In this document: positions 18,839 through 53,567 of the stretch, in pieces
How the letters are laid out: each line of letters begins with the position of its first letter
How positions within the stretch are numbered: position 1 is the first letter of the stretch
DNA from: Ginglymostoma cirratum
Taxonomy: Eukaryota
Direction: 5' to 3'
NCBI GenBank assembly: GCA_024137785.1
Contig: JAHRHZ010000002.1
Location: 4,803,258-4,867,257 of the forward strand
DNA: 64,000 nt
Made by a program: the position numbers and the translations under genes
The notes under the pieces: model-generated
Databases searched by the model: none
Told to the model about the DNA's origin: nothing
The model's input: the letters and a program-made list of their open reading frames with translations, nothing else

Positions 18839-18969
18839 AGACAGTATAAATTCCAAGCTGAGTAGAATAACATTGCTTCATCAGAGGCTCCACTAATGAT
18901 GTCACCTAGCATGGTGACAAAATGTCTGAACGAGAACACGCCAGCCCAGTGAGCAAGTCAACAACCTCA

Positions 18970-23965: not shown

Positions 23966-26296
23966 CAGGTGCCTGCAATGGAAAGGATGATACAGGAGAT
24001 ACAACAGCAACTGTGTGAGGCACTGACAGTCCTGTGTTTGTTGCTGTCTGTTTCGTTACCCCATTTTCCATTCTCAGCCCCTCAAATTTATTTATTTTTG
24101 TTAATCAATTACATTGGTTTGAGTTGTGTTTACGCATTCATTAAAAATTGCCTTAAACTTGATGGTCACTATTGCCTTGAAACTTTTATTCTTATTATCT
24201 GCTCTGGTTCATATACCATTACTCAATGTAGCGGTCAATCTCTGTTCTTGGGCTTTCTACATACTGGATAATAAGAGTTTTCTACGTACTGTAGGGAATC
24301 CATATTGCGTCCGTTCTGTTTCCTCTTCTACCCAAATAAATATCAGAGTTGTTCAAACCCCTCATTATTATTATTCTCTACTTTATTCTCATTTTCCTAA
24401 ATTTTGTGCATTGTACTTCTCTTCCTTCCTTCAATTACTGTTAGATGACCACAACTACCTTTCAAATTCTCCTCCTTGACCAATGCCCCCTCCAAATGTC
24501 TCATTTTGTTCAGTGTCTTTTTCTTTTTTCATCATTCCTCTTACGTTTTCTGAGAGCTTTCCTGAAACGTCAGAAGGGTCTCGACCCGAAACGTCAGCTT
24601 TCCTGCTGAAGGGTCTTGACCGGAAACATCAAGCTTTCCTGCTCCTCTGACGCTGCTTGGCCTCCTGTGTTCATCCAGCTCTACACCTTGTTATCTCAGA
24701 TTCTCCAGCATCGGCAGTTCCTACTATCTACATATAAATGTGCACCGTTGTTGTTGTTGTGGTGGTTTAATTTGCTTCAAAGTTTATAGTGCAACCTCAT
24801 TGCGCGATAGGATTTATACCATTTTTTTTCAAAGTCCACAGACTGTTTGAGCTCTGTTTCTCAAACCTCGGTTTGGTGGAAAGATTTCCTTTCAAGTGGA
24901 TTTAGAAATATCGATCTCCTCACTGGAATGGTACCCTAGGTCACATCTGAAAACATGCTGCCCTTCGTTGTATTTATGGCCCATTGCTTGGGGTTCCCTG
25001 CATTCCAGTTTTATCAAATCACCAAATGGAGAATGACCACAAACCGCCCCCACTTTGGCCACCAGATGGAACTATTTCACCAGCTGGTGGAAACAACTGT
25101 CTCCACATCTTGGACATGAAATTGTTCAGGAATTTTTAGTAATAATGAATTTCCTTTAAAAATATAATGAAATTGGGGTGAATCATATTCCCTGGGTGCA
25201 TTGTAGCTTTAAGTGTAAGATGCAATTTTTGACAACTTTGCTTCACAGTGTACAGGCCAAACCTCCATCTGATAGGAAGTACATCTTGCATTTTTTAAAA
25301 AAAAGCGCAGGGGTTTCTCAAACACACTGAAGACCAGAATTAGAGATCCAGTTCAGTCTCTGGGTCACAATACATTTCTGAATATTATGCATTTAAAATC
25401 AAAACCTCACTTCGGGGCAGCAAGGACCACCAATGGATCTTTGAACTTCCATTTTGATGTAAACAAGATGGGTCAGAGCAGTATATCTCACTTGCAGGAA
25501 GATCTCAGAGTAAAACATGAGGCACTAAAATAACAATATTATATTTTACTCAGTAATATTAGGCACCTCTCCTCCAGTAAACAAACTTGGACTGCAATTT
25601 CTGTCCCCCAATTTTGTTTTCTTTTGTTTGCAATGTCGGCCTTAATTTAACTTTTCTTACCTTTGTTTTGGGATGCTCATAATTCATCATTCATCCTCCT
25701 GTCAACTGCACTGAGGGTTTGCCTGCAATAAGGTGTTTTTACTGGATACTGCATGCTTATGTTGTCTCCCATAATATAAGAAACCGAACATGGATATTGT
25801 GATATTGAAAAATACAACACATGCTGATTACAGCTGACTATTATGTACAAACATTGCATTCTCAGGCACATAGGTGTCTGGCATAACATTAAACTCTTAG
25901 ATTACAGCAGAGGAGCAAACTGCCCTTCAGTGTCATGCTTCAAGTGATCTGAGGTAAGTTGGAGTATGAAATCTTCATACCCTCAAGATACAAGCTATGA
26001 AACAGTAACGTTCTCTTAAAAAAAACTGACACTGTGATCATGAGGCATATACAGCAGACTTACTTCTTATTTCTTTACTCAGTATTACTGCAGTACTCTT
26101 TGCAACACAAATTCTTTTGTCATTTTATGTCTCCTACCTTACGACCCATCTCAGATTTTCCCACCTTTTCCATGTCATCTACATAAAAATATCACATGTC
26201 AAACTTGCCCCAGTTTAGATGAAAGATAATCTCCTGAGACATTAACACTGTTTGTCTCCTCAGTGATGCTCCCAGATCGGCTGAATATTTTCTGCC

Positions 26297-27500
26297 TTTC
26301 TTCCAAAAGGCCGATGTTTTGATGCTGCTATCAGAAGGCATATTCCAGAGTCTGCACTGGTCATCGAGATCTCTGAAGGCCTTATCAAAAAGCAGATTCC
26401 ATTTGATGTCCTTATTTATGAAACTGGCAACAGGTGTAGTATAATTCTCTCAAATTAACTTCTCATTAATGTTATTTCTGTTTCCATTTAGCCCTTGGCT
26501 CTGGTGATATTCAGCGCTGTGCTGTGAGTGCTCCCTGTTTGTACAATCACACAGGACACCCCAGAAGGGACACTGCTCCCCACAGCCACATAACATTGTG
26601 TACAATTCATTTGATGGATCTGTGGGGAGAGAAGTGATCTTCTCAGCAGTGTCCTACTCCTAATCTTTAACATTTTCAGTCAGATCATTTGTTCTGATAA
26701 TATTTTCAGTTTCTTGTTTAAAGTCCTCACAGTTAATCTTTTCAGACTGAAAAATAACAGGTCTCAGTGTCTCCTGTGGAATCTGTATCTCATCTAGTTT
26801 TGTTTTAAATGCCCGAATGATCCCGGTCATTGATTTCTCACCAGTTGGAGGTGTTATATCCTTCAGTGTTGCCCTCACACGTGTGATAATCCCATGCAGA
26901 ATGTCCAGTGTGAGAGAGCACAGCAGAGGGACCTATTCATAATTTGTGGCTTCATAGTGTTGGAGAACTTGTTCTTTCAGCTAACCTTTCTCGAATGACA
27001 CAGTGTGTTGCATATATCAGTAATATTTATCAAAACTGTCTCTCCTTCAAATGCAGCATCGGAGTCAATGTCCTACCTTTCAAATGCTTGTGGTTAATCA
27101 TTTTTCACCACTGCTTGAAACATTGAAAACCACATTTTCTCCAAATCTGTATTGGAAATGACTTCTATTTTAATACTATTGTAAATGTTTTCAGACCTTC
27201 CTTCCGTTTGTGGACCAACTTGTTATTCTCATTCATTATTCTCACTCCCCTGTTCCTTGCAATTACTCAGCTCCTCCTAATTCTTGGGGCTCTGATTTTT
27301 CTTCCCTTTCTGGGTTAGTTCCAGGAAGCTTTTCAATATGGATCACAGTGACTCAGTAAGATCAATGTTATTCCCTGTTCTTTGTAGTTGATTAGCAGAA
27401 TGTTACTGGGATTACTTGTTACTGTAATTACATCACCTACAGAAATTGTATTGTCTGTCAGAACCAGACTCAGTTCTTGCTCACTAGGAGTTTGGTTACC
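26297..27500 (-). pseudogene. Decayed, internally deleted interferon-induced very large GTPase (GVIN1/URGCP family) coding sequence
   Basis: One frame from about 27046 to 26297, with in-frame stops, reads DSFDKYY*YMQHTVSFEKG*LKEQVLQHY...LDEIQIPQETL...KITSLPTDPSNELYTMLCGCGEQCPFWGVLCDCTNREHSQHSAEYHQSQGLNG...EKLI*ENYTTPVAS...LWNMPSDSSIKTSAFWK. This follows the remembered VLIG/URGCP C-terminal signature (LP.KPQDELF..GC..QCPFC...C...H..H...H.PQGL...KLV...W.I.PD.S...S.YWK). Upstream patches (ELTQKGKK, DLEKMW, LSLVLTDNTISVGDVITV) match more weakly. No P-loop was seen. Confidence 0.8.
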
Positions 27501-27555
27501 TCCAACTGGGTCAGATTTCAGGCTGTGAATCTCTCTGAACAGGCTCAGTTTTGAG

Positions 27556-27653
27556 CTATGTATGGGATTCAATTAGCTCCAGTTCCACATTATTACCCGT
27601 GGCTTCCTGTTGATGTAGAGTGGGCTCCATTTCCAGAAATGGTTGCGTGGAAA
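27556..27653 (-). CDS. Gene A candidate terminal exon, coding part ISTQPFLEMEPTLHQQEATGNNVELELIESHT*
   Basis: Acceptor TGTTTTTATTAG, open in phase 1 for 32 residues to TAG at 27556-27558. The sequence continues directly into the VLIG-like relic. Confidence 0.55.
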
Positions 27654-30600
27654 CTAATAAAAACATTAAATAGGTCAACTGTGCAACATTTGAGAAAAGT
27701 GTAAATGTGGATATTAATATAACAATGATTTAAATGGTTTTTACTAAAATTTGGAATCTCACTTGTTTGATGTTCTTCCTCAGACTTCCTGTGGCATTGT
27801 TGCTGTAGGTTTCGAGTTTTATCTGTGGGCAAGAATAAAGAGTTTTAACTGTAAATGCATTTTAACTGTATGTTCCCCACTTACATGTAGCATCTCTGAT
27901 ATATCTTACACTATTATTTTATTCACCCTGCTTTTAAGCTGTGCTGGGGCCTGAGAAAAAGTAGGAGAGAAGCTACAATGGGAAACGGTAAACATAAGAG
28001 AAAAAGAAACTAAAACAGAAATTGCTGGAAATGCACAGCAGGTCTGGCAGCATCTGTGAAGGGAAATCAGAGTTAATGTTTTGGGTCCAGTTACCCTTCT
28101 GTTCTGTAGGAGGGAGTGTATTATCATGGTTAGAAGATGAGCTAGTGAACAGGAAAAAGAGAGAAGGCATAACTGGGTCATCTTCTGGCTGGCAAGAAAT
28201 AATGAGTGATGTGCTACAGAGTTTAGGTTTTGGGACTTCAACATTTAACAGCACGTAAAAGTAATTTCGATGAAGGGACAGAAGGTATGGTTGCTAAATT
28301 TGCTGAAGACACTAAGATAGACACCAAGAAAATTGTGAAGGAGATGCAATGAAGCTACAAAAGGATATTGATAGGTTAAGTGATTGAGCAAAGATGTGTA
28401 AAATGGTGTCTCATGAAAATATTGTCCATTTTGTCAGGAAGAATAAATGTAGTATATTATCCAGATGGTGAGAGGTTGCAGAGGTCTGACATGCAGAGGG
28501 ATCGAGCATTCCAGTGCACAAATTACGAAAGGTTACTATGCAGATAAAAGTAAAGTCATCATAGTCCCACTGGACCGTAGGGCTGCTTTCTCATTAGAGA
28601 CAGATGACTGGTGGTGATTTAATCTGAGGGTCACAACAGCTTAGGCAATGGGAGAGGTCGAGAATGAGAGTCCTTCATGGTAATCTCAGCCAGTGTGGCA
28701 ATTTTGCAAAGACAGCATAATATTATTGTTCATTGCAAGGGGACTGGAATACAAAAGTAAAGAGGTTGTGCTTTATTTATACAGGGATTTGGTGAGACCA
28801 CATCTGGACAATTGTGTACAATGTCACTGTTTTGCTTGGAGAGGAGAAGGCGGAAAGGAGATTTAATCAATGTTTCAAGATCATGAGGCTTCTGAACAGA
28901 GCAGATAAGAAAAACTAATTTCCAAATGTAAAAGGAATGAGAACCAAGGGGAACATGGTATAAAGTGTTTTGCAAAATAAGCAAATGATAGAAAATAACA
29001 TTTCACACACCAAGTGTTTTGGTCTAGAATGTCTTGCCTGGAAGTGTCATGGAGACAGGTTCAACTGAAACATTCAAGACGGTGTTGAATAGTTATTGAA
29101 ACAGGAACAATGAGCAGGATTTTGAGGAAAATGAGCAGGATTTTGAGGAAAAGGAAGGAGTTTGGCATTAAGTCAAAATGCTTAGAGAGCTGGTACAGAC
29201 ATGATGGGTTGAATGACCCCATTCTGAACCATATGCCTCTGTATCACCCCTGTTTTTATTAAGGAAGAAAGTAAATGTGTTGGAAGCAGTTCAGAGATGG
29301 TTTACTAGACTGAAACCTTGAGTGGACAGGTTGTCCTTTGAGTGAAGATTGGACAAGCTAGGCTTGTATTCACTGGACTTCAAAAGAATAAGATTGAAAC
29401 ACACAAGATCATGAAGGCTTTTGACAGGGTGCTTCCTCTTGTGGGAAAATCTAGAATATAAGGACAAGGAAGAGTAGGCCATTCAGCCCCTCAAGCCTGC
29501 TCTACTATATAGTAAGATCATGGCTAATCTGATTATGATGTCAAAACCACACCTGCCTGTCTCCGATAATCGTTCACTGCCTTATTAACAAAGAACCTAA
29601 CCACCTCTGCCATAAAAATATTAAAAGACTCCGCTTCCATTGCCTTTTTCAGGAAGAGAGTTCAAAAGTCTCACAACCTTCTGTTGTGAATGGTGATCAT
29701 TTATTTTTAAACAATGACTCCCTTGTTCAAGATTCTCCTGTGAGACAACATATTCTTTTTAAAACCTCATTCGTGGGATATTGGTGGTGCTGGCCATGTT
29801 TGTATTTTTTGCCCATACCTTGCTGCCATTGACAGAGTGGCGGTGAGCTGCCTTCTTGAAATGCTGCTGTCCCTGTGCCATAGGTTGACCTACAATGCTC
29901 TTAGTGACAGAGTTTTGAATCCTGGAGGTGGCGTGTTGGGAGGGGGTGGGGAGGTGGTGGTGTTTCTGGTGGGGGGAGGGGAGTGGATGGGGTGGGAGTG
30001 TGAGCCCAGCATTGCTAAGCACTTAAGAAGGACTACCATGTTGAACTTTAACTTTATTTCTCTATTTTTCTACTTTATACTGAGAAGGAATTTAATGTTG
30101 AACTCTAATTTTTCTACTTTGTACCTAGGTACCTATGTACCTAAGATGGCACTGGGAATGTAACATTGTACACTCTTCACTGTACTCCTGTACCCTGTTG
30201 AGTACACATGACAATAAATCCAATTCCAATTCTAATTTTAATTCAACGCTAAAGGATAAGCAATAGATTTCCAAGTCAGGATGCTGATTAGCTTGGTTCG
30301 TGGTGTTCCCAGATAACATCCGCATTTGTCCTTCCAGATGGAAGTGGTCATGTGTTTGGTAGGTGCTATCTAAGACTGTTTCTTGAATTTCTGCTCTGCA
30401 TCCTGTAGGTATTGGTATTATGTGTTAACAAAATAGGAACATAAGAAATAGCAGTAGGATTTGGCCCATCAAGCTTGCTCTGCCATTCAATATGAATTGG
30501 CTGAACAGCTGGTTTGCAATGCTGAGTGATGCCAACAGCATAGATTCAATTCACTTGCTGGCTGAGGTTACCATGAAGGACTCTCCTCAATCTCTGTGGC

Positions 30601-33600
30601 ATCCTGGAGGTGACTATAGAACAGTCTATGGATTTCATTGAGACCTTTGATAAGGTTCCACATGGTAGGCTGCCCTGGAAGGTTAGATTGTATGAAATCC
30701 AGGAGAGCTGGCAAATTGGATACACAGTTGGCTTGATGGTAGCAAGCAGAGGGTAATAGTGGAAGGATGCTTGTCGGACTGGAGGCTCAAGACTAGTGGT
30801 GTGTCTCAGGGGTCGGGCCCATTGCTGTTTGTTATCTATATCAGTGTTTTGAATGAGAATGTACAAGGCATGATTAGTAAGTTTGCAGATTACACTAAAA
30901 TAGGTGGTATCATGGATAGAAATTGCAGCAGGATCTCAATCAGCGGGGGAAGTGTGCCGAGAAATTGCAAATGGAGTTTCATCTAGATAAGTGTGAGATA
31001 TTGCATTTTGGAAAGTCAAATCAAGGTAGGAGTTTCATGGTGAATAGTCGGGCCTTAAGGAGTATACTGGAACAGAGGGACCTTGGAGTTCAGGTGCATG
31101 GTTCTCTGAAAGTGGAGTCACAGGTAGATAGGGCAGTGAAGGCAGTTTTTGGCACACCAGTCAGGGCATTGAGTATAGAAGTTGGGAAGTTATTTTGCAG
31201 TTGTACAGGACTTTGGCGAGGCCGCACTTGGAGTGTTGTGTTTAGCTTTGGTCACCTAGCTATAGGAAGGATGTTATTAAACTGGGAAGAGTGCAGAAGA
31301 AATGGCCAGGACTCAAGGGACTGAGTTATAGGGAGAAGTTAGACAAGCTGGGACTTTTCTCTTTAGTGCATAGGAGACTGAGGGGGGGATCTTATAGAAG
31401 TGTATGTGATCATGAGGGGCGTGATAAGGTGAATGCACTCAGTCTTTCTCCCAGGGTTGGGAACTCAAGGACTAGAGGGCATCAGTTTAAGGTAAGAGGG
31501 GAAAGAATAAATGGGAACTTGAGGGGCAACTTTTTTTACACAGAGGGTGGTACGCATATGGAATAAGCTGCCAGTGGAAGTGGTTGAGGTGGATACGTTG
31601 ACAACATTTAAAAGGCATTTGGATGAATACATGGATAGGAAAGGTTTTGAAGGATATGGGCCAATTGCAGGGAAATGGGGTTAGCGTGGATGGATATTTT
31701 GGTCGGCATAGACCAGTTTGAGCCAAAGGGCCTGTCTCCGTGCTATAGGACTCTATGACGATAACTCCATGAATCCATAACAGAAACTGACCTGACTACG
31801 CATATAAATAGGTGAAGTCACCATAGTTCCGGAGTACCGTAGGGATGATCTCTCATTAGGGAAAACAATTGGTGATGGTTGAGGCTGCCCAGTTTGACAT
31901 TCCACTCCCTCTGTTACTTACCTGTCTGAGTCCTTTTCCACATTACTAATATGATTATTCCGACTATAACAGCCAGTGGAATAATCACAAATCCTGTTAT
32001 TTCAAGATGCAAGTGTCTAGCGCCATTTCCTGGGATTTCTGAAACACATTTGAACAAGATCATGATTATTGCTTTGTTCCTGAACCCATTCCCAGTTCTG
32101 AGTTAGCCTGTTTGTGTGTTGTTGTTGTTCCCAGGATTACATTACAAAGAGGTGGCAGAACTAATCATTCCCAAACTTCAGCTAATGACAAATACCTAAT
32201 TCCCATTGAAATAAAGGCCACCTTTGGTTGTATTTCTAAAGACTTTTGGCTCATGGTTCTATCCAGCATATGGAAGGATAACTACCTCAGTCTCTTCTTT
32301 GTAATCTGCAGCTGGTAATGGTTTCCCCTTTACTTACGAATGACTGCTGTGTGTCTCTAATAGGTTTTCGCAAACCCTTTTATTCACACTATTATATGAA
32401 ATACTGTTCTTTGTACATACATCTGTTACTAGTAAAAACTATTCCATCATTTTTTCATCATCTTGTGCATAAAACTGATTCTACTTCAACATCTTTATCA
32501 TCATTTTGTTATTACCCTACAGTCCCCCACCCACCTCGAGTTTCTCTCGACTTTTATACAAACACATTTAACTATTTCTTTAAACTTTAAACATCTCCCA
32601 CCATTAACACACCCACCCAGCACCAACATCTGAACTTCACAGGTTAAGTCTGTAGCCAGACAGGCCACTCAAAATGGCGGAATTGGATAATACACCAAGC
32701 ATTGACCAAAGTATCTGTGCAAAGATACTGAAATAAACAAGCTGCAGACCCTGGCAGGTGGCACAATACACAATTGACTAAGCCTATTTACCAGGATAAC
32801 AGGAAACATCGAGCTGTAACCGGAACAAAAGGACACCTCACACTCTTGTCTGGGCAGCCTCACTTACGTGCCCCTGACACTTTCAGAAACGGAATACCTA
32901 AGACCACCCCACCATCTGCATGGCAATGCCTGATTGGGTCTGATCAGTTAGGGTAATCAATTCGTGATCGATCCATTGGTGGGAATCAAAGATCCTCCCA
33001 AAGGGGTGCGGAAGCTTTCAAGGATAAGAATCACCGCAACAGCACCTTCAGGACCGGTAACTCGAGATCAACCACCATAAGAAGAGACACCCCTAGAAAC
33101 CACTGGGAGAGGAAGACCAGACAACCATCACCATGTGGATCAAGGCCAAGGTTTAGTGTGGTGATGTTTGATCATTCCAAGTTAAATTAAAGTACGAGAT
33201 ACTGATTTAGATTTACTGTGTTAATTGTCGAATTTATAGTGTTAATTGTTAGTTTGTAGCATAATTGCTATCATAGTATTAATTGTGTTATAATCAATAA
33301 AGATCATTTCATATTGTTATTAAGAGTCAACTCACGGTCCTTTGTGGGATATACTAAACTGTGTGTGGTGAGCGCAACCGGTCTTTGTAGCATCTTACAA
33401 TTTATTCTGAGATAGTAGGAACTGCCGATGCTGGAGTCTGAGATAACAAGGTGTAGAGCTGGATGAACACAGCAGGCCACGCAGCATCAGAGGAGCAGGA
33501 AAGCTGACGTTTCAGGTCTGGACCCTTCTTCAGAAATGGGGGAGGGGAAGGGGGCTCTGAAATAAATAGAGAGAGGGGGCGATGATAGAAGGAGCAGATG

Positions 33601-36600
33601 GGTGGAAGAGAAGACTGGCAGGTCAAGGGGGCGGGGATGTAGCTAGTAAAGGTGAGTGTAGGCAGGAAGTGGGGGTGGGGGTTGGTCAGTGAGGTGGGAG
33701 GAGCGGATAGGTGGGAGAGAAGACAGACTGGTCAAGGAGACGGGTTGAGAGCGGGGCTGGTCTTGGGATGAGGTTGGGGATGGGGAGATTTTGAAGCTTG
33801 TAAAGTCCACATTGAGGCCATTGGGTTGTAGGGTTCCAAGGTGGAATATGAGGTGCTGTTCCTCCAGTTTCTGGGTGGCATCGTTGTGACACTGGATGAG
33901 CCCCAGGATGGACATGTCGTCCAGGGAGTGGGAGGGGGAGTTGAAGTGGTTCGCGACAGGGAGGTGTTGTCGTTTGTCGCAAACCAAGCGCAAGTGCTCC
34001 ACAAAGTGGTCTCCGAGCCTCCACTTGGTCTCCCCAATGTAGAGGAGGCCACATCGGGAACAGTGGCTACAATATACCACATTAACGGATATGCAGGTGA
34101 ACATCTGCTTAATGTGGGAGGTTTTCTTGGGGTCTGGGATGGGGGTGAGGGGGGAGGTGTAGGGGCAGGTGTAGCACTTCCTGTGATTGCAGGGAAAAGT
34201 CCCAGCGGTGGTGGGGCTAGAGTAGAGTGTGGAGCAGAGGAGGGAGTCACGGAGAGAGCGGACCCTCCGGAAGGCAGATAAGGGTGGGGAGGGAAATATA
34301 TCCTTGGTAGTGGGGTCAGATTGCAGGTGGCGGAAGTGGCGGAGAATGATGCGTTGAATCCGGAGGTTAATGGGGTGATACATGAGAACAAGGGGAACTC
34401 TGTCTTTGTTTTTATCGCGGGGAGGGGGAGTGAGGTCTGAGGTGCGGGAAATGCAAGAGATGTGGTTGAGGGCGTTTTTGACCACTGGAGTGGTGGGAAA
34501 TTGCGGTCCTTGATAAACGAGGACATCTGGACATCCAGGAGTGGAACGCCCCATCTTGGGAACAGGTGCAGTGGAGGCAGAGGAATTTGGAATAGGGGAT
34601 GTCATTCTTGCAGGAAGGTGGGTGACAGGAGGTGTAGTCTAGGTAGCTGTGGGAGTCAGCAGGCTTGAAATAGATATCAGTTTCAAGGTGGTCACCAGAG
34701 ATGGACACAGAGAGGTCCAGGAAGGTGAGAGAGGTATCAGAGATGGTCCAGGTGAACTTGAGGTTGGGGTGGAAAGTGTTAGGAAAGTTGATGAACTGTT
34801 CGAGCTCCTCGTGGGAGCACGAGGCGGTGCCGATACAGTCATCGATATAACGGAGGAAGAGGTGGGGGATGGGGCCAGTGTAGCTGCAGAAGAGGGACTG
34901 TTCCACGTATCCTACAAAGAGGCAGGAGTAGCTTGGGCCCATGCAGGTAGCCAAGTCCACCCCTTTCATTTGTAGGAAGTGGGAAGGAGTTGAAGGAGAA
35001 GTTGTTAAAGGTAAGGACAAGTTCGGTTAGGCGGATAAGGGTGTCGGTGGAGGGGGAGTGGAGGGGGACTGGACGGGCTGCGGGACAGGAAGAAGTGGAG
35101 GGCTTTTAGGCCATCTGCATGGGGAATGCAAGTAGTTTATTCTGTTCTTGTAATCATCACCACTGATCAAGGGTGAGAGTCTTCAATCATTTCTGTAACA
35201 TAATTATAATTCTGTAAAATAGCCAATATAGTTCTTTCCCAGTATCTCACAGTTTATAGTCATCATACTCATTCAGTTTTGTTGTTCCAATTAGTATTGA
35301 TACTTTTCGGGTCCTTCTTAACATTCCCACCTGGTTTGTCAATATGAGAATGCAATTGCTCTGCCTGTCTGAGGACTGTCTTCTAACTTCCCATCTCTGA
35401 TCCATATTAAGTTGGACTCTTACGTGACTGCACACAGCATTCACAACAAGATAGATGGTCTAAAGTTACTGAAATAACTCCACAGAGGCCAGTATCCCAT
35501 CACCAAGTCACCCTTTATTTACACGTGGAAAGTCCTTGACACTAATCCAGCTCAGAGCGAACAGGGTATCTGACACTCCGTTTTTATCTGTCAGCCACAT
35601 CTCCCTGATTGAATCAGATTAACAGTCCCAATTAGGGAACTCGTATTCTATGAGGTCCACTTGGCTGACCTCATTGCAATCACTGCAGGTACAAATACAG
35701 ATACAAGGGTACAATCTAATGACAATTACAGCAACATGTTTGCATGGTGACCAGAACTGGCAACAGAATATTCAAGATATTTGATATTCAGCAAGGGTAG
35801 ATACAAAGGAAAAGGAGGTGATGTTATGTTGATAGGAAGGAGTGGGATTGGTACATTAGTAAGGGAGGATCTCAGATCAGAAGAACAATGTGCACAAACT
35901 ATTTAGGTATTTAGCAAACAGCAAGGGGTAGCCGATACTGGTTGGATTTATTTATAGGTCACCAAGTAGTAGTTGTTGCATGGGGAATGTTGTTAATTGG
36001 AGATGAGAGAAGCAAGTAGCATGGCCACCATCGTTATCATGGTGACTTCTTTCTATATATAGACTGGGTAAACCAACTGAGCACCACAGCTGTGGAGGAT
36101 TGTAGAGCTTCTGGATTGTGTTTGGGATGGTTTTCTAAAGCAGAATGTTGTGGAGTCAATGATAGGATGTGTTATTTTAGGTCTAGTATTCTGTAATGAA
36201 AAATAGCTAATTAACTATCCTCAGGGATGATGTGAAGGAATAGAGCAGTACCTTTGAAAGTGAGGTGGTTAATTCTGAAGCCAGAGTGTTCAATTTGAAT
36301 AACAGAAAAACGATGAAGGCATGAGGCCCAAGTTGGTTGAGGCAAACTGAGCAAATAATTTAGAAGGCATGATTATACAAAGGCAATGGATAGTCTTTAA
36401 AGAATTATGATATAACTTACAGCAACTATCCACGCCTTCAAACTTAAAAAAAGTCAGTCAGCATGGTGAACAAAGAAAGTTCAGGATTGTATAGGATTAT
36501 GAGCAAAGATCTATAAATTTGCCTGAAACAGCAGTAATTCTGAAGGGATTGGGAGGTGCATAGAATACCGCAAAGGAGGACCAAGAACCTGTTGACAAAA

Positions 36601-42600: not shown

Positions 42601-45600
42601 AAGGGGGCACAGGTTAAATGTAACAGGGGGAAAGTTTAAGTGAGATGTGCGAGGAAAGTTTTTCACGTAGAGAGTGATTAGGAGACTGCCAGAAGAGGTG
42701 TTGGAAGCAGGCACATTGGCAACATTTAAGAGGCATCTGGATGGTTACGTGAATAGGGAGGGGATAGAGGGATACTGACTGAGCGTGGGCAAAAGGTGTG
42801 CTTTTTAGTTTAGTTCGGGCATGATGATCGGCACAGGCTTGGAGGGCCAAAGAGCCTGTTCCTGTGCTGTACTTCTCTTTTGTTCTTTGTTCCAACAGAC
42901 TCTCTGCACAAAGAAAAGTTAAAAAGATATACACTTCGTAGCTTCTATTTAACCAATTAGGTTTAAGTCCAGTTTGAAAGAAAAATCTCACAAACACTAT
43001 TGCATTGTCCTTGATACGTACTTCAACTGTTTTTCATTTAATGTTCTATGTCTTGGTACAATCTCAATCCTGCTCCTCAAATTATCTTTTGAGCCTAACA
43101 TTTAATCCGCTTGATCCTATTGACACACAGCTGAGGTAACAATTCAGGTAAGTGCTTTGAGTTTTTACATTTTAGCAAACCCTAATTCCTCAAACTCAGT
43201 CAGTGAAAATTCATTCTGAGCTCTATCCCTATCATTGGCTCCTGCATGGACTACAACAACTGAATCCCCTTCCTGCCGTTGTCCTCCAGTCCAAATTCAT
43301 CTCTAGACATGAAGAGACATCTTTAACAAGGCACCTTCCATTCACAGCTGCAGAGGATAGTCACATCCCCCCCTAACCATACAGTGTCCCATCACTACCA
43401 TGTTCCTTTCTACACTCCCTATCTTCCACCACCACCACCACCACCAGCGCTTTCCCCCCCACCCACCAGCACTACCCCCCACCACCATTCCCCCAACCCA
43501 CCAACACCACACCACCACCCCCAGCCCACCACTGCCTAACTATTAGGTCCCCACTGGGTCTTCGAGATACCAGTTTGTGTTTTGCATGAAAGATTGAGGC
43601 CATTATAATATTTAAGATGCGTTTGTATGGTGTTAGGGAATCCTGTTGTCTCCCATTAATGTGCTTTGTGAGAAACATCACTTTGACAACCACTTCACCA
43701 AAACTCTAATCAAGTCACTTTCTCAGAAAATTTAAGTGATGTGTAGAATTAACTGCTGGTCTGTTGCCTTTACACAAACAGCCAAGTGGCATTAACTGAT
43801 TCCATAATCCTCCAGCCAAACCATTGGAAAAATTGCAAAACATATCAATATATAACTTGCTCGGTGATGTACTTCATTTTATTTTTCTAAGTTTCTCTTC
43901 CTTTTATTCCTTTTTTGAATCTGTTTCCTTGGCACAGTCTCAGTCTCTCCTGCCTGTTGCTATCCATATCTCATTCATTCTATCCTTTTAGTCACACACT
44001 ATTTCCCTGTTTCTCTTTCTCTCTCTCTCACACATGACTATCTAATACGGTTCCTTACCCCACTGATAGAGCTTGGCCTCTGTCATGCTGCTGTGTTCAA
44101 TTCGACAGGAATATTGATCCTCATCCCCAAGATTGATCTCAATCTCTTTCTGGATCTGATGGGTCCCATCGTGATTCGGTCGAATCCCCGAGGATTGTGT
44201 CTCAGACATCGCCTTTCCATTCCTTAGCCAGGTCATGTTGATGTCTACAGGATAAAATCCAGTGACCAGGCAGAAGAGAGTCAGCAGTTTGTCCTGACGA
44301 TTGGGCTCATTTCTGGAGATGAACACTTCAGGCTGAACTGTGATGGGAAAGGGTGAAAACACAAACAATAGACAGACACTGAATGGAATGGGAGAGCGGT
44401 TACATAGATCAGTGAGGTTAGATCAGAACTGAAATATATACCTTTCCTTTTGAGATATTCCTTTCCAAAGTGTAAGCGTAGTTTCAAACGCTCAACAAGT
44501 TCTATTTCCAACTGCCATTTCCAATATTTGTTCCAGGATTCATCTGAATTCCATTTTTCCGCAGTCTTCACTGCAAAGTGATTTGATGCGACCCATCTCA
44601 TTCTGTCTGGCTCTAAACTAATAAGATCATTTCCATCAAATCCAAATCGCATTGATGTCTTAATGGAGCCATCATCATTTATTTCAACACTCCTTATCCA
44701 TTGGAAAATGTGAATTCCTGACAATAATGAGCAGGAAACAAGGAGCTATTATTGGTTGCAATGTTTCTTTATTAAATGATAAATTTCTCTGCGGGTTCTA
44801 TATTGATATACCAGATTATAGTAAACCTAAAATAGCTCAGTATTACAATGGATTCCTTTATTGGTTCATTCACAGCAGGATTTATTACTGTAAAACTGAT
44901 TCTATACACAGTACTGAAGGAATATTTGTGTGAAAATATCTACTGCCTGTGAATATCTCTATTTGTGAAACCCAGGCTGCCCTACAGGACTTGCACAGTG
45001 TATACTAGTTTTGATGGTGCACAGGAGATAAATCCTGTTCCCCTCAAGGGACATGAAGCCATCCAGGCAACACCTACACTGTCAAGTGAAAATGGGTCGG
45101 TAAGAAAATCAATGTGAGGAACTCAGCTCCTGGGGCCTGTAGCTAATGATGAAGAAAGTTCAATGAGCTCATGAGGTAGGTTCACAGCACCAGCCTCACT
45201 GCTACAATATTCCTGCGTTCTTCTCCCTGCTCAGTCATACAATCATTGCCCCACACTTCACTATGTCTGTTCACGTTTCAAATGAAATGCCAAACCCGTT
45301 CTCCCTTCTCATATAGATAAAGTCATAGAGATGTACAGCACAGAAACAGACCCTTTGGTCCAACTCATCCATGCCGAACAGATATCTTAAATCAGACCAG
45401 TCCCATTTGCCATATTTTGGCCCATATCCCTCTAAATCCTTCCTATTCATATACCCACATAAGATTTACTGTAAACACAAAATCAGAGCCCAACTTCACT
45501 TCAAAGCAAAGAAGAGATTTGCTGAAGCAGTCTCATATCATATGACATCATCTCCAAGGTGAAGTCACCCATAGTCTAACTAGACTATAGGCTGCTCTCT

Positions 45601-48600: not shown

Positions 48601-51600
48601 TCTGGCACTCACTAAAAAAGCAGTCCGGAGAGATAACAATAAACCAGCTAGCATCCACAGATACGGGAAGAATTTCAGGTTGATGACCTTCGTCAGACGG
48701 GGAAAATTTTTCAATATGTAGCAGGTTTTGAGCAAGTGAAAGAGGGAGTTTAGAAATAGAATAAGGGAGAAGATCAATGACAGATTGGAATGGTGAGGGG
48801 TTAAATGACAAAGGAGTTGGTGTTGCTGAGCCAAAGGGAGTGACAGTGTGTAAAGTAGAGAAACAGAAGTTGAGTGTTCAGAAGAATTACACAGGATTTC
48901 TGGCACTGAAAGAGGTTAAACCAGTCCCTGCAAGTGCTTATGCTCAACCTGAGCTCCTCCCATCCTATTTGCTGTAAATCTATGTTTGTAATCTTCTATT
49001 GCCTTTTCCCTCAAATACTGAACTAATTTCTCCTTAAACGCATCAATACCATTTGCTTTAATGACTGTGCGGTGGCTCTTTGGGTAAAAGAAATTTAAAT
49101 TCCTTGTTGGATTTCTCTGGCTATTGTATATTAGGGCTTTGAATGATTTTCCCTAAATGTGGAAATGATCTCTCTGCATCCACGCAATCAAAATCTTTAA
49201 AAGTTATTAAAACTGCCAATTGACACACCTTAGGCAGAATGGACTCCGCCTTCAATTCCTTTCTCATATGTATACCCATAAATACATTGTTATAAATCCT
49301 CTCTGTGCCATCTCCAGTGCCTAATGCTTTATTCTTATCATAACGTGAGAACCAAAACTGCAGGCAGTATGTAGTCTAAGTAACTGTTCAATACAAATTT
49401 AACATAATTTCCTAATTTTCAATGCTATTCCTTTAGATATAAAGCCAAGTGCTTGGTTCACGGTTTTTAATGACTTTGCTAAGCTGTGACGTAGGTTTTG
49501 GTGATTGATGTATTTATGTGACAAGATCTACTTTTCTTCTCCCCCACCTAGATCTGCAGTTTGTAACTAATAAATAATCTCCCAATTTCCAAGAAACACA
49601 GCCTACTCCTACAATTTGGTGTCAGCTGCTAGAATACACCTCCTCCCATCCACCTTCCTGCAAAAATGCCATCCCCTATTCCCAATTCTTTCACCTCCGC
49701 CGCATCTGCTCCCAGGATGAGGCATTCCACTCCCGTACATCTCAGATGTCCTCATTTTTCAAGGACCGCAACTTCCCCCCAACAGTGGTCGAGAACGCCC
49801 TCAACCGTGTCTCCCGCATTTCCCACAACTCATCCCTCACACCCCATCCCCACAATAACAACCATAACAGAATCCCCCTCGTCCTCACATACCACCCCAC
49901 TAACCTCCGGATCCAACGCATCATCCTCCTACACTTCCGCCATCTGCAATCCAACCCCACCACCAAAGACATTTTTCTCTCCCCACCTATCTGCTTTCCG
50001 GAGGGACCACTCTCTCCGTGACTCCCGTGTCCGCTCCACACACCCCTCCAGCTCCACCTCACCGGGCACTTTTCCCTGCAACCGCAGGAAGTGCTACGCC
50101 TGCCCCTACGCCTCCGCCCTCACCACCATCCCAGGCCCCAAGAAGACTTTCCACATCAAGCAGATGTTCACCTGCACATCTGCCAATGTGGTATACTGCA
50201 TCCGTTGTTCCTGTTGTGGCCTCCTCTACATCGGGGAAACCAAGCAGAGGCTTGGGAACCGCTTTGCAGAACACCTACGCTGGGTTTGCACTAAACAACT
50301 GCACCTTCCAGTCACGAACCATTTCAACTCCCCCTCCCATTCCTCAGACGACATGTCCATCCTGGGCCTCCTGCAATGCCACAACGATGCTACCCGAAGG
50401 TTGCAGGAACAGCAACTCTTATTCTGCTTGGGAACCCTGCAGCCCAATGATATCAATGTGGACTTCACAAGTTCAAAATCTCCCCTCCCCCTACCGCATC
50501 TCAAAACCAGCCCAGCTCATCCCTGCCTCCCTAACCTGTCCTTCCTCCCACCTGTCCCCCCTCCCACCTCAAGCCCCACCCCCATCTCCTGCCTACTAAC
50601 CTCACCCCGCCCCTTGACCTGTCCATCCTATCTCCTCCCTACCTCCCCATCTACATTCACTTTACTGGCTCCATCCCCGCCTCTTTGACTGGTCTGTCTC
50701 CTCTCCACCTATCTTCTCCTCTATCCATCTTCTTTCCGCCTCTCCCTCTCTCCTTATTTATTTCAGAACCCCCTTCCCCTCCCCCATTTCTGATGAAGGG
50801 TCTAGGCCCAAAACGTCAGCCTCCCTGCTCCTCTGATACTGCTTGGCCTGCTGTGTTCATCCAGCTCTACACCTTGTTATCTCTTGAAATCTGTTTTGCC
50901 ACCTGGACCGTGACTCCATATTCACTGGCCTTGTTCATTTGTCTATTGTGGGCCAGCTTAGCAAAGGCCTTTTGAAAATCCAGATAAATTACTTATATCA
51001 ATTTACCACTATCTACTCTCTCTGTAACCTCCGCAAAGTTATCAATAGGTTGGGTCAAGTATGGTTTTCTTTTGTGAAATCCATACTGACTGCTGCACAA
51101 GCTAGCTACCAGTTTCTTGGTTAGCTGCTTCCAACCTCTTTCAGGGTGGGGATTTACAGGGCTTGCTTAGTTTAGCGTAGAAGAGGAAGACACCTGGTAA
51201 TTGAAGTGTGAGGAGACCACATTGTGAGCAGTGAATAGAATACACTAAATTGAAATAACTGCACATAAATTTTCTATCACAAATCACTGTATCACATGGA
51301 AATGGAGGCTTGGATGAAAAGGACACAAAGAAAAGGGCAAATGGAAGTGTGTGCATCGTTGTTCTTACCGGATGTCTGGTTTGTACTCTTCATCATCATC
51401 TTCAGGTTCTCTTTTGCAATGGCACAATGTTTATTCCCTCGATTTGTGAGATATTCCCAGTATTCCTCATCAAAGGCATCTGTCATCCACTGCTGTCGGG
51501 AGACTATCCGAGGGGCACTGCTGTCATAATAGGCCACCGGAACGCCGTTGATCATTCCCACTCCAACATACTCAGGTAAATCAGTGGTGCCAGAGGTGGC

Positions 51601-53567
51601 TAAATACATTACCATAAATTTATTCCTGTCTATAGAAAATAAAGATTAACAAATTCAAGGCATACTTGAATAAACACTCACAAACACTACCAGCTGATCA
51701 AGGGAAGCTCACCTACATAGTGACAATCTTCAGTTTAATGGTAGGAATGCTCAAATCCGGATAGTGCATTCACACCAGCAAATACCTATCATAGCTCCAA
51801 TAGCTGCTAAAAAAGGTACCAAAGACAGTGGCCCAGATCTTCTGGTCAGGTTCAGGAATGATGCTGAGTGCATTGACTCTACTGGTGGAGACTTCTGTAA
51901 CCCAGTCCTTTTCTGATTTTTCAGCTATTTCTTTCAATTCAAGAGTTGAGGGGAGAGTGGCTGCCCTTGACATCGAAACATAGGAATTAGGAGTGGGACT
52001 AGGCAAATTCGGCCCTTTGGGCTGCTCCACTATTTAACATGATCATGGCTGAACTAATCTTGGTTTCAACTCCGCTTTCCTGCCTGTTCCCATAGCCCTT
52101 TATCCTGCATTTCACAAGTGTGGCATCAAGAAGGGTATCGGAGGGAAAACTCTTTGCTGGTTGGAGCACACAGGAAGATGGTTGTAGTTTTTGGAGTTCA
52201 GCCATCTCAGATCCAGGACATCTCTGCCCGAGTTCCTTAGGTTAGTGTCCTAGGCTATGGGCTGTTTGGTTGTAATGATTAGCTGATCACTGTTAGACTG
52301 TTAGATATTAAACTGTGTGACTGGTCCTGGTTCAGTATGCAAATAGGGCACATATATCTGACCCAAATCTCTGACTCTGAACTCCATGTCAGGAACAGTT
52401 GTGGAGAATGCCAGACAATCCCAGAATCCTGACTTGCATCTCCCAATTTAGATCCTAAATCTGATGATCTGGACACCTGAAGATTTTTATCAGTAAATAT
52501 CTGAAGACGCATCAGAAGATTTCCTGGCGGGAAATAAAATGCTTCTAGAAGCTGCTTATTCATTATATATCATTCTTTCAGTTCAAAAATTAAGCAAGCA
52601 CCTGTAAGTATTTTGAATCAACCCGTTAATGACAAATCTCCAGAGTGGGACTCAAACCCGGACCTTCTGACTCTGCCGCAGGAGCCTTAAAAAGAAAGCT
52701 ACTGCTGGTATTTCCAGACAGTCTCCTATCCAAAATCTGAAGCTGCCTACGAGAGCAGACAAGATCAGGCATTTTCAGACTCGTGACAACTGGGCTTCAG
52801 AAACCAACAGCTCATTTTAGATCTGTTGGGAAGTGCAAGGAGAGAGAAACGGCTGTTTCCCTCTAGTGCAAAACCTGCAGGGAGAGAGAAAGGGAAAGGC
52901 TGTTGGACAGAAACAGACAAAGAAACAATGAGATCGAGAGAGAAACATGTGCACGGACAGAGGCAAGACCGCAGAAAAAAGAGACAATCAGAGAACCAGA
53001 GACAGAGATAATGAGAGAGAGAGGGACAGAGGGAGACATTGAAGAAGAGACAGAGAAGAAACAGAAACACAGGGACACAAAGAAAGAAAGACAGAGATCC
53101 TTAGAGAGAACAGAGATAGAGGGATAGAGAGCAGACGGAGAGAAGGAGACCAAGGAAAAAATATCCAGAAGGAGACAGGCAGGGATCCAGACAAAGACAA
53201 ACAGACACACATATATACGGACACACAAGCACACACACACACATGCACACACAAGCACGCACACAGACCAACACACAGACACAGATTGAGACACACTCTG
53301 AGTCACAGAAAGACAGAGAAAGAACACAGACATACACAGTGAGACAGACATGAAAGGAAATTCTCCCCTCGTCTCCTCATCGGTACAATCGTGACATTAA
53401 TTCCTGACAGACGCCGACTAACATTTCCACTCCCATAAAGTCCCAGGAAAGTTTCTGTCCTCACCGTTTGCTGGAGGAGTGAGTGTGAAAATGGAAGGCT
53501 GAATTCTATACTTACCGGGAGAGACCCAGGAAAAACACAGGGAGATAGAGAAAAGGATCAGCAACAT
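27556..53567 (-). CDS. Non-classical MHC class I heavy chain, gene A (multi-exon gene span: leader, alpha1, alpha2, alpha3, TM, cytoplasmic exons)
   Basis: Five phase-1 exons with GT-AG sites splice into one open frame (52+261+276+279+117 nt). The protein is about 333 aa if it ends in the 27934-27950 exon, or about 380 aa if it uses 27763-27822 and 27556-27653. Domain order is the canonical class I order; the cytoplasmic exons are inferred. Confidence 0.9.
27763..27822 (-). CDS. Gene A candidate cytoplasmic exon, DKTRNLQQQCHRKSEEEHQT
   Basis: Acceptor CTTTATTCTTGCCCACAG and donor A|GTGAGA; 60 nt, phase 1-1, open in the class I frame. Flanked by 104-nt and 109-nt introns. Confidence 0.6.
27927..27950 (-). 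CDS. Gene A candidate 24-nt cytoplasmic micro-exon, GPSTA* (in-frame TAA at 27934-27936)
   Basis: Strong acceptor TCTCTCCTACTTTTTCTCAG; possible donor G|GTGAAT that overlaps an AATAAA at 27918-27923. Confidence 0.55.
28150..29470 (+). mobile_element. Mosaic of degenerate CR1 RT and 3' fragments
   Basis: AKFAEDTKI motif, LVRPHL-like remnant and CR1 3' UTR-like segments. Confidence 0.65.
30622..31760 (+). mobile_element. 5'-truncated CR1-type LINE
   Basis: SGVSQGS.GPLLF, ISKFADYTKIGG, MEFHLDKCEILHFG; 3' tail CTCTATGAC. Confidence 0.88.
31922..32038 (-). CDS. Gene A exon 5, connecting peptide plus transmembrane segment
   Basis: Acceptor TGTTTCAG and donor G|GTAAGT; 117 nt, phase 1-1. Reads EIPGNGARHLHLEITGFVIIPLAVIVGIIILVMWKRTQT, a hydrophobic run followed by WKR stop-transfer. 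Too short for the ORF track. Confidence 0.88.
32651..33399 (+). mobile_element. Probable solo LTR
   Basis: TGTA...TACA termini and an AATAAA at 33296-33301; no target-site duplication seen. Confidence 0.45.
33410..35135 (-). mobile_element. 5'-truncated Penelope-like element (Neptune-type): RT C-terminal half, Zn linker, GIY-YIG endonuclease and pLTR
   Basis: FLRYIDDCIG (RT), CNHRKCYTCPY linker and CSRCGLLYIGETK..L..HF.EHL in the ORF track. Flanked by direct repeat TTTATTCTG at 33401-33409 and 35136-35144. Confidence 0.9.
35730..37322 (+). mobile_element. Degenerate CR1-type LINE (endonuclease through RT start)
   Basis: Remnants of the KGKGG-type endonuclease motif and of SPGSDDLRP, DWTVANVP.LFK motifs, with many stops. 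Confidence 0.7.
36787..36978. mobile_element. Short palindromic Penelope-pLTR-derived insertion inside a CR1 copy
   Basis: Inverted halves; TAATTATTTT at 36775-36784 and 36979-36988. Confidence 0.7.
40550..42892 (+). mobile_element. Degenerate CR1-type LINE ORF2 through 3' end
   Basis: KSPRTDGIYSR.LRE...WRLANIAPLFKKGSRDNLANYRPVSLISVMGKLLE, D.SKVFDKVPH, KFADD, then a TGTTC-type tail. Confidence 0.9.
43427..43532 (+). repeat. (CCA)n and C-rich simple repeat
   Basis: Visible CCACCACCA runs. Confidence 0.8.
44059..44337 (-). CDS. Gene A exon 4, alpha3 C1-set Ig domain
   Basis: 279 nt. Reads VQPEVF...LTLFCLVTGFYPVDINMTWLRNG...IRPNHDGTHQ...YSCRIEHSSM...W, with donor G|GTAAGG. A 104-nt intron separates it from alpha2. 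Confidence 0.96.
44442..44717 (-). CDS. Gene A exon 3, MHC class I alpha2 domain (no cysteines)
   Basis: Acceptor TTGTCAG and donor G|GTATAT; 276 nt. Reads GIHIFQW...RFGFDGNDLISL...WVA...AVKTAEKWN...LVERLK...FGKEYLKRK, matching class I alpha2 motifs. Confidence 0.95.
46174..47943. mobile_element. Penelope-like (Poseidon-type) insertion made of two oppositely oriented copies forming a long inverted repeat
   Basis: About 46207-47003 is the reverse complement of about 47137-47942. GIY-YIG motif NVIYKIPCKVCNKHYIGQTGRKL. 12-bp direct repeat TAATCCAATCAC at 46162-46173 and 47944-47955. Confidence 0.9.
46245..46290 (-). ncRNA. Minimal type I hammerhead ribozyme motif in a Penelope pLTR
   Basis: Minus strand reads GCA-CTGATGA-T-GTTACCC-AGCA-GGGTAAC-GAAAC-GTC-TGC: intact core, 7-bp stem II, GUC triplet, GCA/TGC stem I. 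Confidence 0.7.
49636..50883 (+). mobile_element. 5'-truncated Penelope-like element (Neptune-type) in the gene A alpha1-alpha2 intron
   Basis: CNRRKCYACPY and CSCCGLLYIGETKQRLGNRFAEHL in frameshifted ORFs; same 3' terminus as the 33410 copy. Confidence 0.9.
51369..51629 (-). CDS. Gene A exon 2, MHC class I alpha1 domain
   Basis: Acceptor TTTTCTATAG and donor G|GTAAGA; 261 nt. Reads DRNKFMVMYLATSG...LPEYVGVGMINGVPVAYYDS...RQQWM...EEYWE...TNQTSG, with class I YDS, W..., YW motifs and the N86 sequon NQT. Confidence 0.95.
52880..53350 (+). repeat. GA/CA-rich low-complexity tract in gene A intron 1
   Basis: (GA)n, (GACA)n and (CA)n runs. Confidence 0.85.
53516..53567 (-). CDS. Gene A exon 1, signal peptide MLLILFSISLCFSWVSP
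   Basis: ATG at 53567, hydrophobic 17-mer, phase-1 donor G|GTAAGT. Near-identical to the leader at 5095-5146. Confidence 0.9.

What the first reader, a model, noticed from the sequence alone, without database searches (positions are those of the whole stretch)
26297..32038. Class I cytoplasmic exons run directly into a very-large-GTPase (GVIN1/URGCP) relic: possible MHC-I-VLIG fusion receptor
Seen: after the TM exon come two small phase-1 candidate exons (24 and 60 nt) and a third acceptor (27653), spaced by 104-nt and 109-nt introns. The third exon opens in the class I frame and continues on the same strand, with no recognisable repeat in between, into VLIG-like sequence ending in the GCGEQCPF...C...H..H...HQSQGL...FWK signature (GCGEQCPF at 26564-26587). 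Established: GVIN1/URGCP proteins are interferon-associated very large GTPases, usually encoded almost wholly by one giant terminal exon, while class I tails are normally short. Inference: the ancestral gene encoded a class I ectodomain plus TM with an intracellular VLIG module (a ligand-sensing receptor coupled to an immunity GTPase), and that module has since decayed in this copy. The alternative is that a class I gene captured the last exons of a neighbouring VLIG gene. I know of no description of such a fusion but cannot exclude one.
Basis: partly seen in the sequence, partly recalled or inferred. Interest (0 to 1): 0.92.

Follow-up and report, generated by a model that had tools for sequence, protein, structure and literature searches.

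The report
Shark MHC-I gene ending in dead VLIG exon
An expressed shark MHC class I gene is spliced, in frame, into the start of a neighbouring giant immune GTPase (VLIG/GVIN1-like) gene that has since decayed; another shark has an annotated protein model joining the same class I parts to an intact GTPase, so a real class I-GTPase fusion is possible but not shown.

Summary
The core observation holds. A spliced transcript contig joins the class I TM exon (32038-31922) to a 60-nt exon (27822-27763) and then to an exon starting at 27653. That exon runs through the whole VLIG relic.

VLIG homology starts at the 27653 acceptor, which looks like the native acceptor of the VLIG giant exon. It covers the 5' leader, the former ATG (now ACG) and the N-terminal linker, then a middle piece and the last ~280 residues. 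Two deletions removed about 1170 codons, including the whole G domain. There are 11 stops and 3 frame changes.

The class I frame enters in the VLIG's own frame and stops after 32 codons, at a TAG where intact relatives have Gln. Today's product is therefore a class I molecule with a tail of about 57 residues; the relic is 3' UTR.

RefSeq XP_060706692.1 (Hemiscyllium ocellatum, 1932 aa) has MHC_I, C1-set, TM and a complete VLIG in one ORF. It lacks the leader and half of alpha1, and other VLIG models carry unrelated N-terminal add-ons. A functional fusion receptor is therefore unproven (about 0.3).

The parts
51369..51629 (-). Class I alpha1 exon (261 nt, phase 1/1)
   Evidence: Pfam MHC_I E 5.7e-09. 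AG/GT borders and open frame. 63% identical to XP_060706692.1 aa 1-40.
44442..44717 (-). Class I alpha2 exon (276 nt, phase 1/1); contains no cysteine, so no alpha2 disulfide
   Evidence: Pfam MHC_I E 4.4e-12. Borders. 68% identical to XP_060706692.1 aa 39-131.
44059..44337 (-). Class I alpha3 exon (279 nt, C1-set Ig domain)
   Evidence: Pfam C1-set E 2.7e-16. Borders. 80% identical to XP_060706692.1 aa 132-224.
31922..32038 (-). Connecting-peptide/transmembrane exon (117 nt, phase 1/1)
   Evidence: Borders and frame. Present in transcript contig X1 record 1. Homologous to the TM segment of XP_060706692.1: Smith-Waterman score 50 against 22 +/- 4.5 for shuffles, p 0.0006.
27927..27950 (-).
   Evidence: In-phase TAA. 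The transcript contig joins 31922 directly to 27822.
27763..27822 (-). 60-nt exon adding 20 codons to the tail; origin unknown (possibly a former 5' UTR exon of the VLIG gene); absent from XP_060706692.1
   Evidence: AG/GT borders, phase 1/1. Both of its junctions are in contig X1; one raw read in X10. No VLIG homology in any frame.
27556..27653 (-). Coding start of the terminal exon: 32 class I tail codons plus TAG. The sequence is the VLIG giant exon's 5' leader and first codons, read in the VLIG frame.
   Evidence: Frame. Homology to XP_067865890.1 aa 56-87 and XP_060706692.1 aa 261-292 begins at the acceptor. The TAG aligns with Gln in both.
27598..27600 (-). ACG at the position of the native VLIG initiator ATG
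   Evidence: Aligns with Met1 of the stand-alone Chiloscyllium punctatum VLIG (P0104), Met277 of XP_060706692.1 and Met74 of XP_067865890.1.
27342..27597 (-). VLIG relic, N-terminal acidic linker (about aa 75-162 of XP_067865890.1); one frame change near 27530
   Evidence: tblastn, two linked matches, E 3.4e-09; alignments.
27118..27393 (-). VLIG relic, middle piece (aa 459-552 of XP_067865890.1, the end of the URGCP domain); 4 stops. About 296 codons are deleted before it and about 874 after it, including the whole G domain.
   Evidence: tblastn E 1.7e-07 to 1.6e-08 with four proteins. Stop count. G domain positions in the intact proteins.
26204..27040 (-). VLIG relic, C-terminal ~280 residues in one frame with 6 stops. 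Holds the Cys/His signature (GCGEQCPF at 26587-26564, with CPFC changed to CPFW).
   Evidence: tblastn E 1e-82 to 3e-89 at 62-66% identity. Profile HMM hits occur only here. Phmmer against 1.84 billion proteins, best E 1.1e-17.
25863..26203 (-). Rest of the 3' UTR. The transcript contig runs 287 nt past 26150. No canonical AATAAA; AGTAAA at 26079 and CATAAA at 26129.
   Evidence: The true 3' end was not determined.

Best explanation
Gene A is an expressed nonclassical MHC class I gene on the minus strand. Its last exon is the collapsed remains of the giant coding exon of a neighbouring GVIN1/VLIG-like gene on the same strand.

The pre-mRNA is spliced from the TM exon to a 60-nt exon and then to the native acceptor of the VLIG exon. 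The class I frame continues in the VLIG's own frame. It passes through the former 5' leader (17 codons) and the former start codon (ATG now ACG), then 9 more VLIG codons, and stops at a TAG that was a Gln codon.

The protein made today is a class I chain with a tail of about 57 residues and no GTPase. The rest of the relic serves as 3' UTR.

The most likely origin (inferred) is a tandem class I then VLIG gene pair whose transcripts were spliced together. This class I copy came to depend on the VLIG exon for its stop codon and 3' end, and kept it after the VLIG died. This account does not require a fusion protein that ever worked.
For: - Spliced contig and raw read showing the junctions.
- Exon borders, phases and the stop codon.
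- VLIG homology begins at the acceptor and does not extend upstream of it (p 0.20).
- Relic anatomy: 11 stops, 3 frame changes, two deletions, no G domain anywhere in the 64 kb.
- The missing regions are as well conserved among VLIGs as the retained ones, so their absence is real.
- The same TM-to-VLIG splice, in frame, appears in XP_060706692.1.
- The decay is complementary: here the class I is intact and the VLIG is dead; in XP_060706692.1 the class I is N-terminally incomplete and the VLIG is intact.
- Stand-alone VLIG models start at the native Met in Chiloscyllium punctatum.
- Heterogeneous N-terminal add-ons on other VLIG models show that the giant exon accepts many kinds of upstream exon.
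Against: - This class I copy has no other 3' end in the one assembled transcript, so the splice is constitutive here rather than an occasional read-through.
- Phase and frame match. The leader stretch is open in three loci and differs by an in-frame 2-codon indel. This would also fit a leader that is translated.
- The leader exon of gene A was not identified, so the intactness of the class I gene is not fully shown.
- Expression evidence comes from one contig, one junction read and a few low-depth reads.
Confidence: 0.55

Rival explanations
1. Ancestral true fusion receptor. The founding gene of this class I/VLIG pair encoded one type I membrane protein: a class I ectodomain, a TM segment and a cytosolic VLIG GTPase. 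This copy lost the GTPase by nonsense mutations and deletions and survives as a plain class I. Intact fusions may persist in other loci or species.
For: - In-frame entry at the native VLIG acceptor; TAG at a former Gln codon.
- XP_060706692.1 has MHC_I + C1-set + TM + URGCP + URGCP_GTPase in one 1932-aa ORF.
- XP_067865890.1 (Heterodontus francisci) has a signal-like peptide and a TM segment ahead of the same linker and an intact VLIG. It is the only one of 103 VLIG-family proteins scanned with an N-terminal TM.
- The splice is constitutive in the transcript seen here.
Against: - XP_060706692.1 lacks a leader and the first half of alpha1, so as modelled it could not enter the ER.
- The Heterodontus TM segment is not demonstrably related to class I TM exons: p 0.33 against XP_060706692.1 and 0.004 against the window.
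- Only one of 126 fetched VLIG-family proteins carries class I homology.
- Other VLIG models have clearly accidental N-terminal add-ons.
- A frame match is expected one time in three by chance.
Confidence: 0.3
2. Unrelated adjacent pseudogene. The VLIG fragment merely lies downstream of the class I gene and is never part of its transcript.
For: - The C-terminal block is in another frame and 500 nt beyond the class I stop.
- X10 read depth is uneven: about 3 over 26350-26950, none over 27145-27542.
Against: - One contig links the TM exon, the 60-nt exon and 27653-26150 without a break, with 3 mismatches in 1504 nt.
- VLIG homology starts exactly at the spliced acceptor.
Confidence: 0.03
3. Both halves are dead: a transcribed class I pseudogene running into a VLIG pseudogene, with no protein product of any use.
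For: - The leader exon was not identified.
- Gene A lacks the alpha2 disulfide.
- Expression is low in poly(A) run X10.
Against: - Six consecutive exons keep AG/GT borders, phase 1 and open frames, while the adjoining VLIG sequence accumulated 11 stops.
- The intact-looking class I part of XP_060706692.1 also lacks alpha2 cysteines, so this is a lineage trait rather than decay.
Confidence: 0.12

Closest known systems
RefSeq model XP_060706692.1, 'interferon-induced very large GTPase 1-like' (Hemiscyllium ocellatum), 1932 aa
   Same: - Same order of parts: alpha1 (partial), alpha2, alpha3, class I-type TM exon, then the VLIG giant exon entered at the same point and in frame.
- Class I parts are 63-80% identical to gene A; the TM exon is homologous; the linker is homologous.
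   Different: - Its VLIG part is intact, with URGCP and URGCP_GTPase domains.
- The TM exon joins the VLIG exon directly, without the 60-nt exon.
- It lacks the leader and the first ~46 residues of alpha1.
- It is an automatic prediction and is not named as a fusion.
GVIN1 / VLIG-1 family of interferon-inducible very large GTPases. Human GVIN1 forms a coat on cytosolic Burkholderia (doi 10.1101/2025.03.24.645074, eLife 2025; abstract seen).
   Same: - The relic belongs to a shark subfamily of this family (tree).
- It keeps the C-terminal Cys/His signature.
   Different: - Known members are soluble cytosolic proteins.
- The relic has no G domain and no open frame, and it is part of a class I mRNA.
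Elasmobranch nonclassical MHC-Ib lineages (UBA, UDA, UEA, UFA) in MHC-linked clusters (PMC10751288)
   Same: - A class Ib-type gene sitting among other class I genes.
- It lacks classical features such as the alpha2 disulfide.
   Different: - That paper has no occurrence of 'GTPase', 'GVIN' or 'cytoplasmic' in its main text.
Transcription-induced chimeras and exon capture between tandem neighbours; immune gene fusions such as TRIM5-CypA (from my own knowledge, not checked here)
   Same: - An upstream gene splices into the exons of the downstream gene.
- One partner can decay while the other keeps the shared exon.
   Different: The partners (MHC class I and a VLIG GTPase) and the recurrence across shark loci have not been described in the library searched.

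Membership tests
VLIG / GVIN1-URGCP family | URGCP-like GTPase (VLIG-type G) domain | tested here: not met
   No match anywhere in the 64 kb by tblastn with 26 or more full-length VLIGs or by a full-length profile HMM. The deletion spans aa 553-1426 of XP_067865890.1, whose G domain is aa 561-963.
VLIG / GVIN1-URGCP family | Conserved C-terminal region with the Cys/His signature | tested here: met
   27040-26204 matches at 62-66% identity, E to 3e-89. One signature Cys is changed to Trp.
VLIG / GVIN1-URGCP family | Open reading frame | tested here: not met
   11 in-frame stops, 3 frame changes, and ATG changed to ACG.
MHC class I heavy chain | alpha1/alpha2 MHC_I fold and alpha3 C1-set domain, on phase-1 exons | tested here: met
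   Pfam PF00129 on both exons and PF07654 on alpha3. Borders and phases.
MHC class I heavy chain | Transmembrane exon after alpha3 | tested here: met
   32038-31922 encodes a hydrophobic 22-residue core followed by WKR. It is present in the transcript.
MHC class I heavy chain | Leader exon with a signal peptide | tested here: inconclusive
   A possible ATG...GT exon lies near 51870-51780. It is not conserved with gene B and the reads laid did not cover it.
Classical (peptide-presenting) class I | alpha2 intradomain disulfide | tested here: not met
   No cysteine in the alpha2 exon.
MHC-I-VLIG fusion protein (hypothetical class) | Class I exons and VLIG sequence in one mature transcript | tested here: met
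   Contig X1 record 1, plus one X10 read.
MHC-I-VLIG fusion protein (hypothetical class) | One open frame from the class I ectodomain through the G domain | tested here: not met
   In the window the frame stops at 27558-27556 and there is no G domain. The feature is met only in the model XP_060706692.1 from another locus or species, which lacks a leader.
MHC-I-VLIG fusion protein (hypothetical class) | The fusion protein is made and inserted in a membrane | not testable with these tools
   Needs long-read cDNA, ribosome profiling or proteomics.

The most novel reading that the evidence does not exclude
Sharks have, or once had, a working type I membrane receptor in which a nonclassical MHC class I ectodomain is joined through its own TM exon to a complete cytosolic very large GTPase. 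The class I/VLIG pair was duplicated as a unit, and this window holds a copy in which the GTPase half died.
Probability: 0.3. Interest if true: 0.9.

Novelty: new variant of a known kind. Interest (0 to 1): 0.62.

Why it matters
If the fusion is real, it would be the first case of an MHC-fold ectodomain wired directly to a cell-autonomous immunity GTPase. That would link ligand recognition on the luminal or surface side to a dynamin-like effector on the cytosolic side, in the oldest jawed vertebrates.

If it is not real, the locus still shows three things:
- A class I gene can take its tail, stop codon and 3' UTR from a dying neighbour.
- Class I and VLIG genes are interleaved on one strand in shark class Ib clusters.
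- Automatic annotation hides such chimeras under a plain 'GVIN1-like' name.

The question can be tested directly with existing shark genomes and long-read RNA.

Tried and rejected
- **Pfam on the relic pieces:** nothing found. The local copy lacks the C-terminal VLIG families that the protein database lists.
- **First tblastn with distant VLIGs:** this suggested the relic began abruptly at about 27046, leaving a 600-nt gap with no homology. I held that view until closer shark paralogues showed N-terminal and middle pieces. The 'unrelated 3' fragment' reading was then dropped.
- **VLIG homology upstream of the acceptor** (a TM-like stretch in the 109-nt intron and the 60-nt exon): not significant, p 0.20.
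- **Other weak hits:** at 19.4-19.7 kb and 48.0-48.3 kb to the Cys/His region, and of the alpha1 exon to a VLIG G-domain stretch. All had E 0.001-0.6 in tiny databases and were judged chance.
- **Database searches for fusions by the representatives' Pfam columns**: none found. The fusion model was hidden as a non-representative member of a 90% cluster and surfaced only through the listing of cluster members.
- **ESM Atlas:** only ordinary class I clusters.
- **Run X11:** no reads laid.
- **Papers:** PMC8454915 and PMC7002201 are not held.
Full report
**Observation**

The stretch lies on the minus strand of a repeat-rich, shark-like window. Pfam finds an MHC_I alpha1 exon, an alpha2 exon and a C1-set alpha3 exon.

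With a script I fixed the borders of all the exons:

| Exon | Coordinates |
|---|---|
| alpha1 | 51629-51369 |
| alpha2 | 44717-44442 |
| alpha3 | 44337-44059 |
| TM | 32038-31922 |
| 60-nt exon | 27822-27763 |
| last exon | from 27653 |

All have AG/GT borders and are phase 1, with open frames.

The class I frame closes at TAG 27558-27556, 32 codons into the last exon. The tail after the membrane is therefore about 57 residues.

**RNA evidence**

No run was on record as an RNA holder, but two raw RNA-seq runs of the same species label were offered. I laid four runs on 26150-32100.

- One Logan contig of run X1 (2041 nt, depth 11.3) covers 32039-31922, then 27822-27763, then 27653-26150 without a break.
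- It has 3 mismatches in 1504 nt.
- It extends 72 nt beyond the TM exon and 287 nt beyond 26150.
- Both joints have CT..AC ends, which is GT..AG on the minus strand.
- One raw read of the poly(A) RNA-seq run X10 shows the 27763>27653 junction.
- The 24-nt exon is not used.

Depth in X10 is low and uneven: about 3 over 26350-26950 and none over 27145-27542. I cannot explain this.

**The VLIG relic**

Pfam gave nothing for the pieces. A phmmer search with the 67-residue signature piece against 1.84 billion proteins returned 78 hits, best E 1.1e-17. The four hits I scanned carry the URGCP and URGCP_GTPase domains. The sources name the shark and chimaera hits I looked up 'interferon-induced very large GTPase 1-like'.

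With those proteins, tblastn matched only 27064-26204: one frame, six stops, E 6.5e-55. Neither a relaxed tblastn nor a full-length profile HMM found anything else in the window. The regions just upstream in the protein are as well conserved as the matched ones. At that point I read the relic as a 5'-truncated fragment lying 600 nt beyond the acceptor.

That reading was wrong. Closer shark paralogues from a region-restricted search match the C-terminal block at 62-66% identity, E to 3e-89. They also reveal more. For XP_067865890.1 (Heterodontus francisci, 1725 aa) the matches are:

| Protein residues | Window coordinates |
|---|---|
| about 56-99 | 27653-27523 |
| 99-162 | 27533-27342, after a frame change |
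| 459-552 | 27393-27118 |
| 1427-1677 | 27040-26300 |

The relic is therefore a whole giant exon that lost about 296 and about 874 codons by two deletions. The second deletion removed the entire G domain (domain positions). It carries 11 in-frame stops and three frame changes. In a tree of the C-terminal region it falls inside this shark subfamily on a long branch.

**The junction**

VLIG homology starts exactly at the 27653 acceptor and does not extend upstream of it (p 0.20 by shuffling).

Stand-alone Chiloscyllium punctatum VLIGs begin with a Met that aligns to ACG 27600-27598. So 27653-27601 is the former 5' leader of the giant exon, and 27653 is most likely its native acceptor (inferred; I could not read an intact locus).

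The class I frame after splicing is the VLIG's own frame. The TAG that ends the class I protein aligns with Gln in both XP_067865890.1 and XP_060706692.1.

**An intact counterpart**

The Pfam columns of the cluster representatives showed none. Listing cluster members turned up XP_060706692.1 of Hemiscyllium ocellatum, 1932 aa. Its Pfam domains are:

| Domain | Residues |
|---|---|
| MHC_I | 7-126 |
| C1-set | 137-216 |
| URGCP | 436-734 |
| URGCP_GTPase | 766-1168 |

Its class I part is 63% (alpha1), 68% (alpha2) and 80% (alpha3) identical to gene A. Its TM segment is homologous to gene A's TM exon (p 0.0006). That TM segment joins directly to the same leader, followed by the native Met and a complete VLIG.

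It is the only one of 126 fetched VLIG-family proteins with class I homology.

**Why a functional fusion is not shown**

- The Hemiscyllium model begins at an internal Met of alpha1. It lacks a leader and the first ~46 residues of alpha1, so as modelled it could not enter the ER.
- It is an automatic prediction.
- Other models of the same subfamily carry N-terminal extensions that look accidental: a LINE-derived piece that also matches 41209-41586 of this window, an AIG1/septin-like GTPase in a 'low quality' model, and a low-complexity repeat.
- The Heterodontus model has a signal-like peptide and a TM segment. That TM segment is not demonstrably related to class I TM exons.
- The decay is complementary. 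Here the class I is intact and the VLIG dead; in the Hemiscyllium model the VLIG is intact and the class I incomplete. This fits two neighbours that are spliced together but function separately.

Against that view, the splice appears constitutive in this gene. The frames match. The leader stretch is open in three loci and differs by an in-frame indel.

**Verdict**

What is shown:
- An expressed class I gene whose tail, stop codon and 3' UTR come from a dead VLIG exon, entered at the VLIG's own acceptor and in its own frame.
- An annotated in-frame class I-VLIG model in another shark.

What is inferred:
- A tandem class I then VLIG pair, spliced together and duplicated as a unit.

My odds are about 0.55 for exon capture or read-through without a working fusion, about 0.3 for an ancestral or still-existing fusion receptor, and about 0.12 for both halves being dead.

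I found no paper describing such a fusion. The MBE 2023 paper on the elasmobranch MHC has no occurrence of 'GTPase' or 'GVIN' in its main text.

Noticed in passing
window 4433-4712, minus strand: Alpha1 exon of a second class I gene (gene B). It is 75% identical in DNA to gene A's alpha1 and 63% identical in protein to XP_060706692.1 aa 1-40. The rest of gene B lies left of the window, so its 3' end, with or without a VLIG exon, could not be checked.
   Followed up: partly
window 28013-28100; also 9679-9767, 14584-14663, 20852-20941: Short, very high-copy element, SINE-like. Word depth exceeds 10,000 in contig runs X3 and X1, and many RNA reads have loose ends at 28022-28066.
   Followed up: partly
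window 33646-35026 (-), 49578-50685 (+), 18497-18877 (-), 21516-21860 (-): Repeated retroelement ORFs with a Cys-rich motif followed by a GIY-YIG-like motif. This suggests Penelope-like elements, but Pfam GIY-YIG matched only weakly (E 0.003, below the cutoff) on one copy.
   Followed up: partly
window 40916-41851 (+) and 30610-31563 (+): LINE-type reverse transcriptase fragments inside the long class I introns. The first also matches the N-terminal 124 residues of a Heterodontus VLIG gene model (XP_067881252.1), so that model's N-terminus is probably transposon-derived.
   Followed up: partly
window 26150-27940: In poly(A) run X10 the read depth is about 3 over 26350-26950 and zero over 27145-27542, although both lie in the same terminal exon of the X1 contig. 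Possible causes are a second transcript, a 3' fragment, or reads from a close paralogue.
   Followed up: no
P0086 = XP_067865890.1 (Heterodontus francisci), aa 1-54: This is the only VLIG-family protein of 103 scanned with an N-terminal signal-like peptide plus a strong TM segment ahead of an intact VLIG. It may be a membrane-tethered VLIG, or an artefact of translating 5' exons.
   Followed up: partly
window 52770-53400: Low-complexity tract (CT/GT-rich) giving long spurious ORFs on both strands just upstream of gene A.
   Followed up: no
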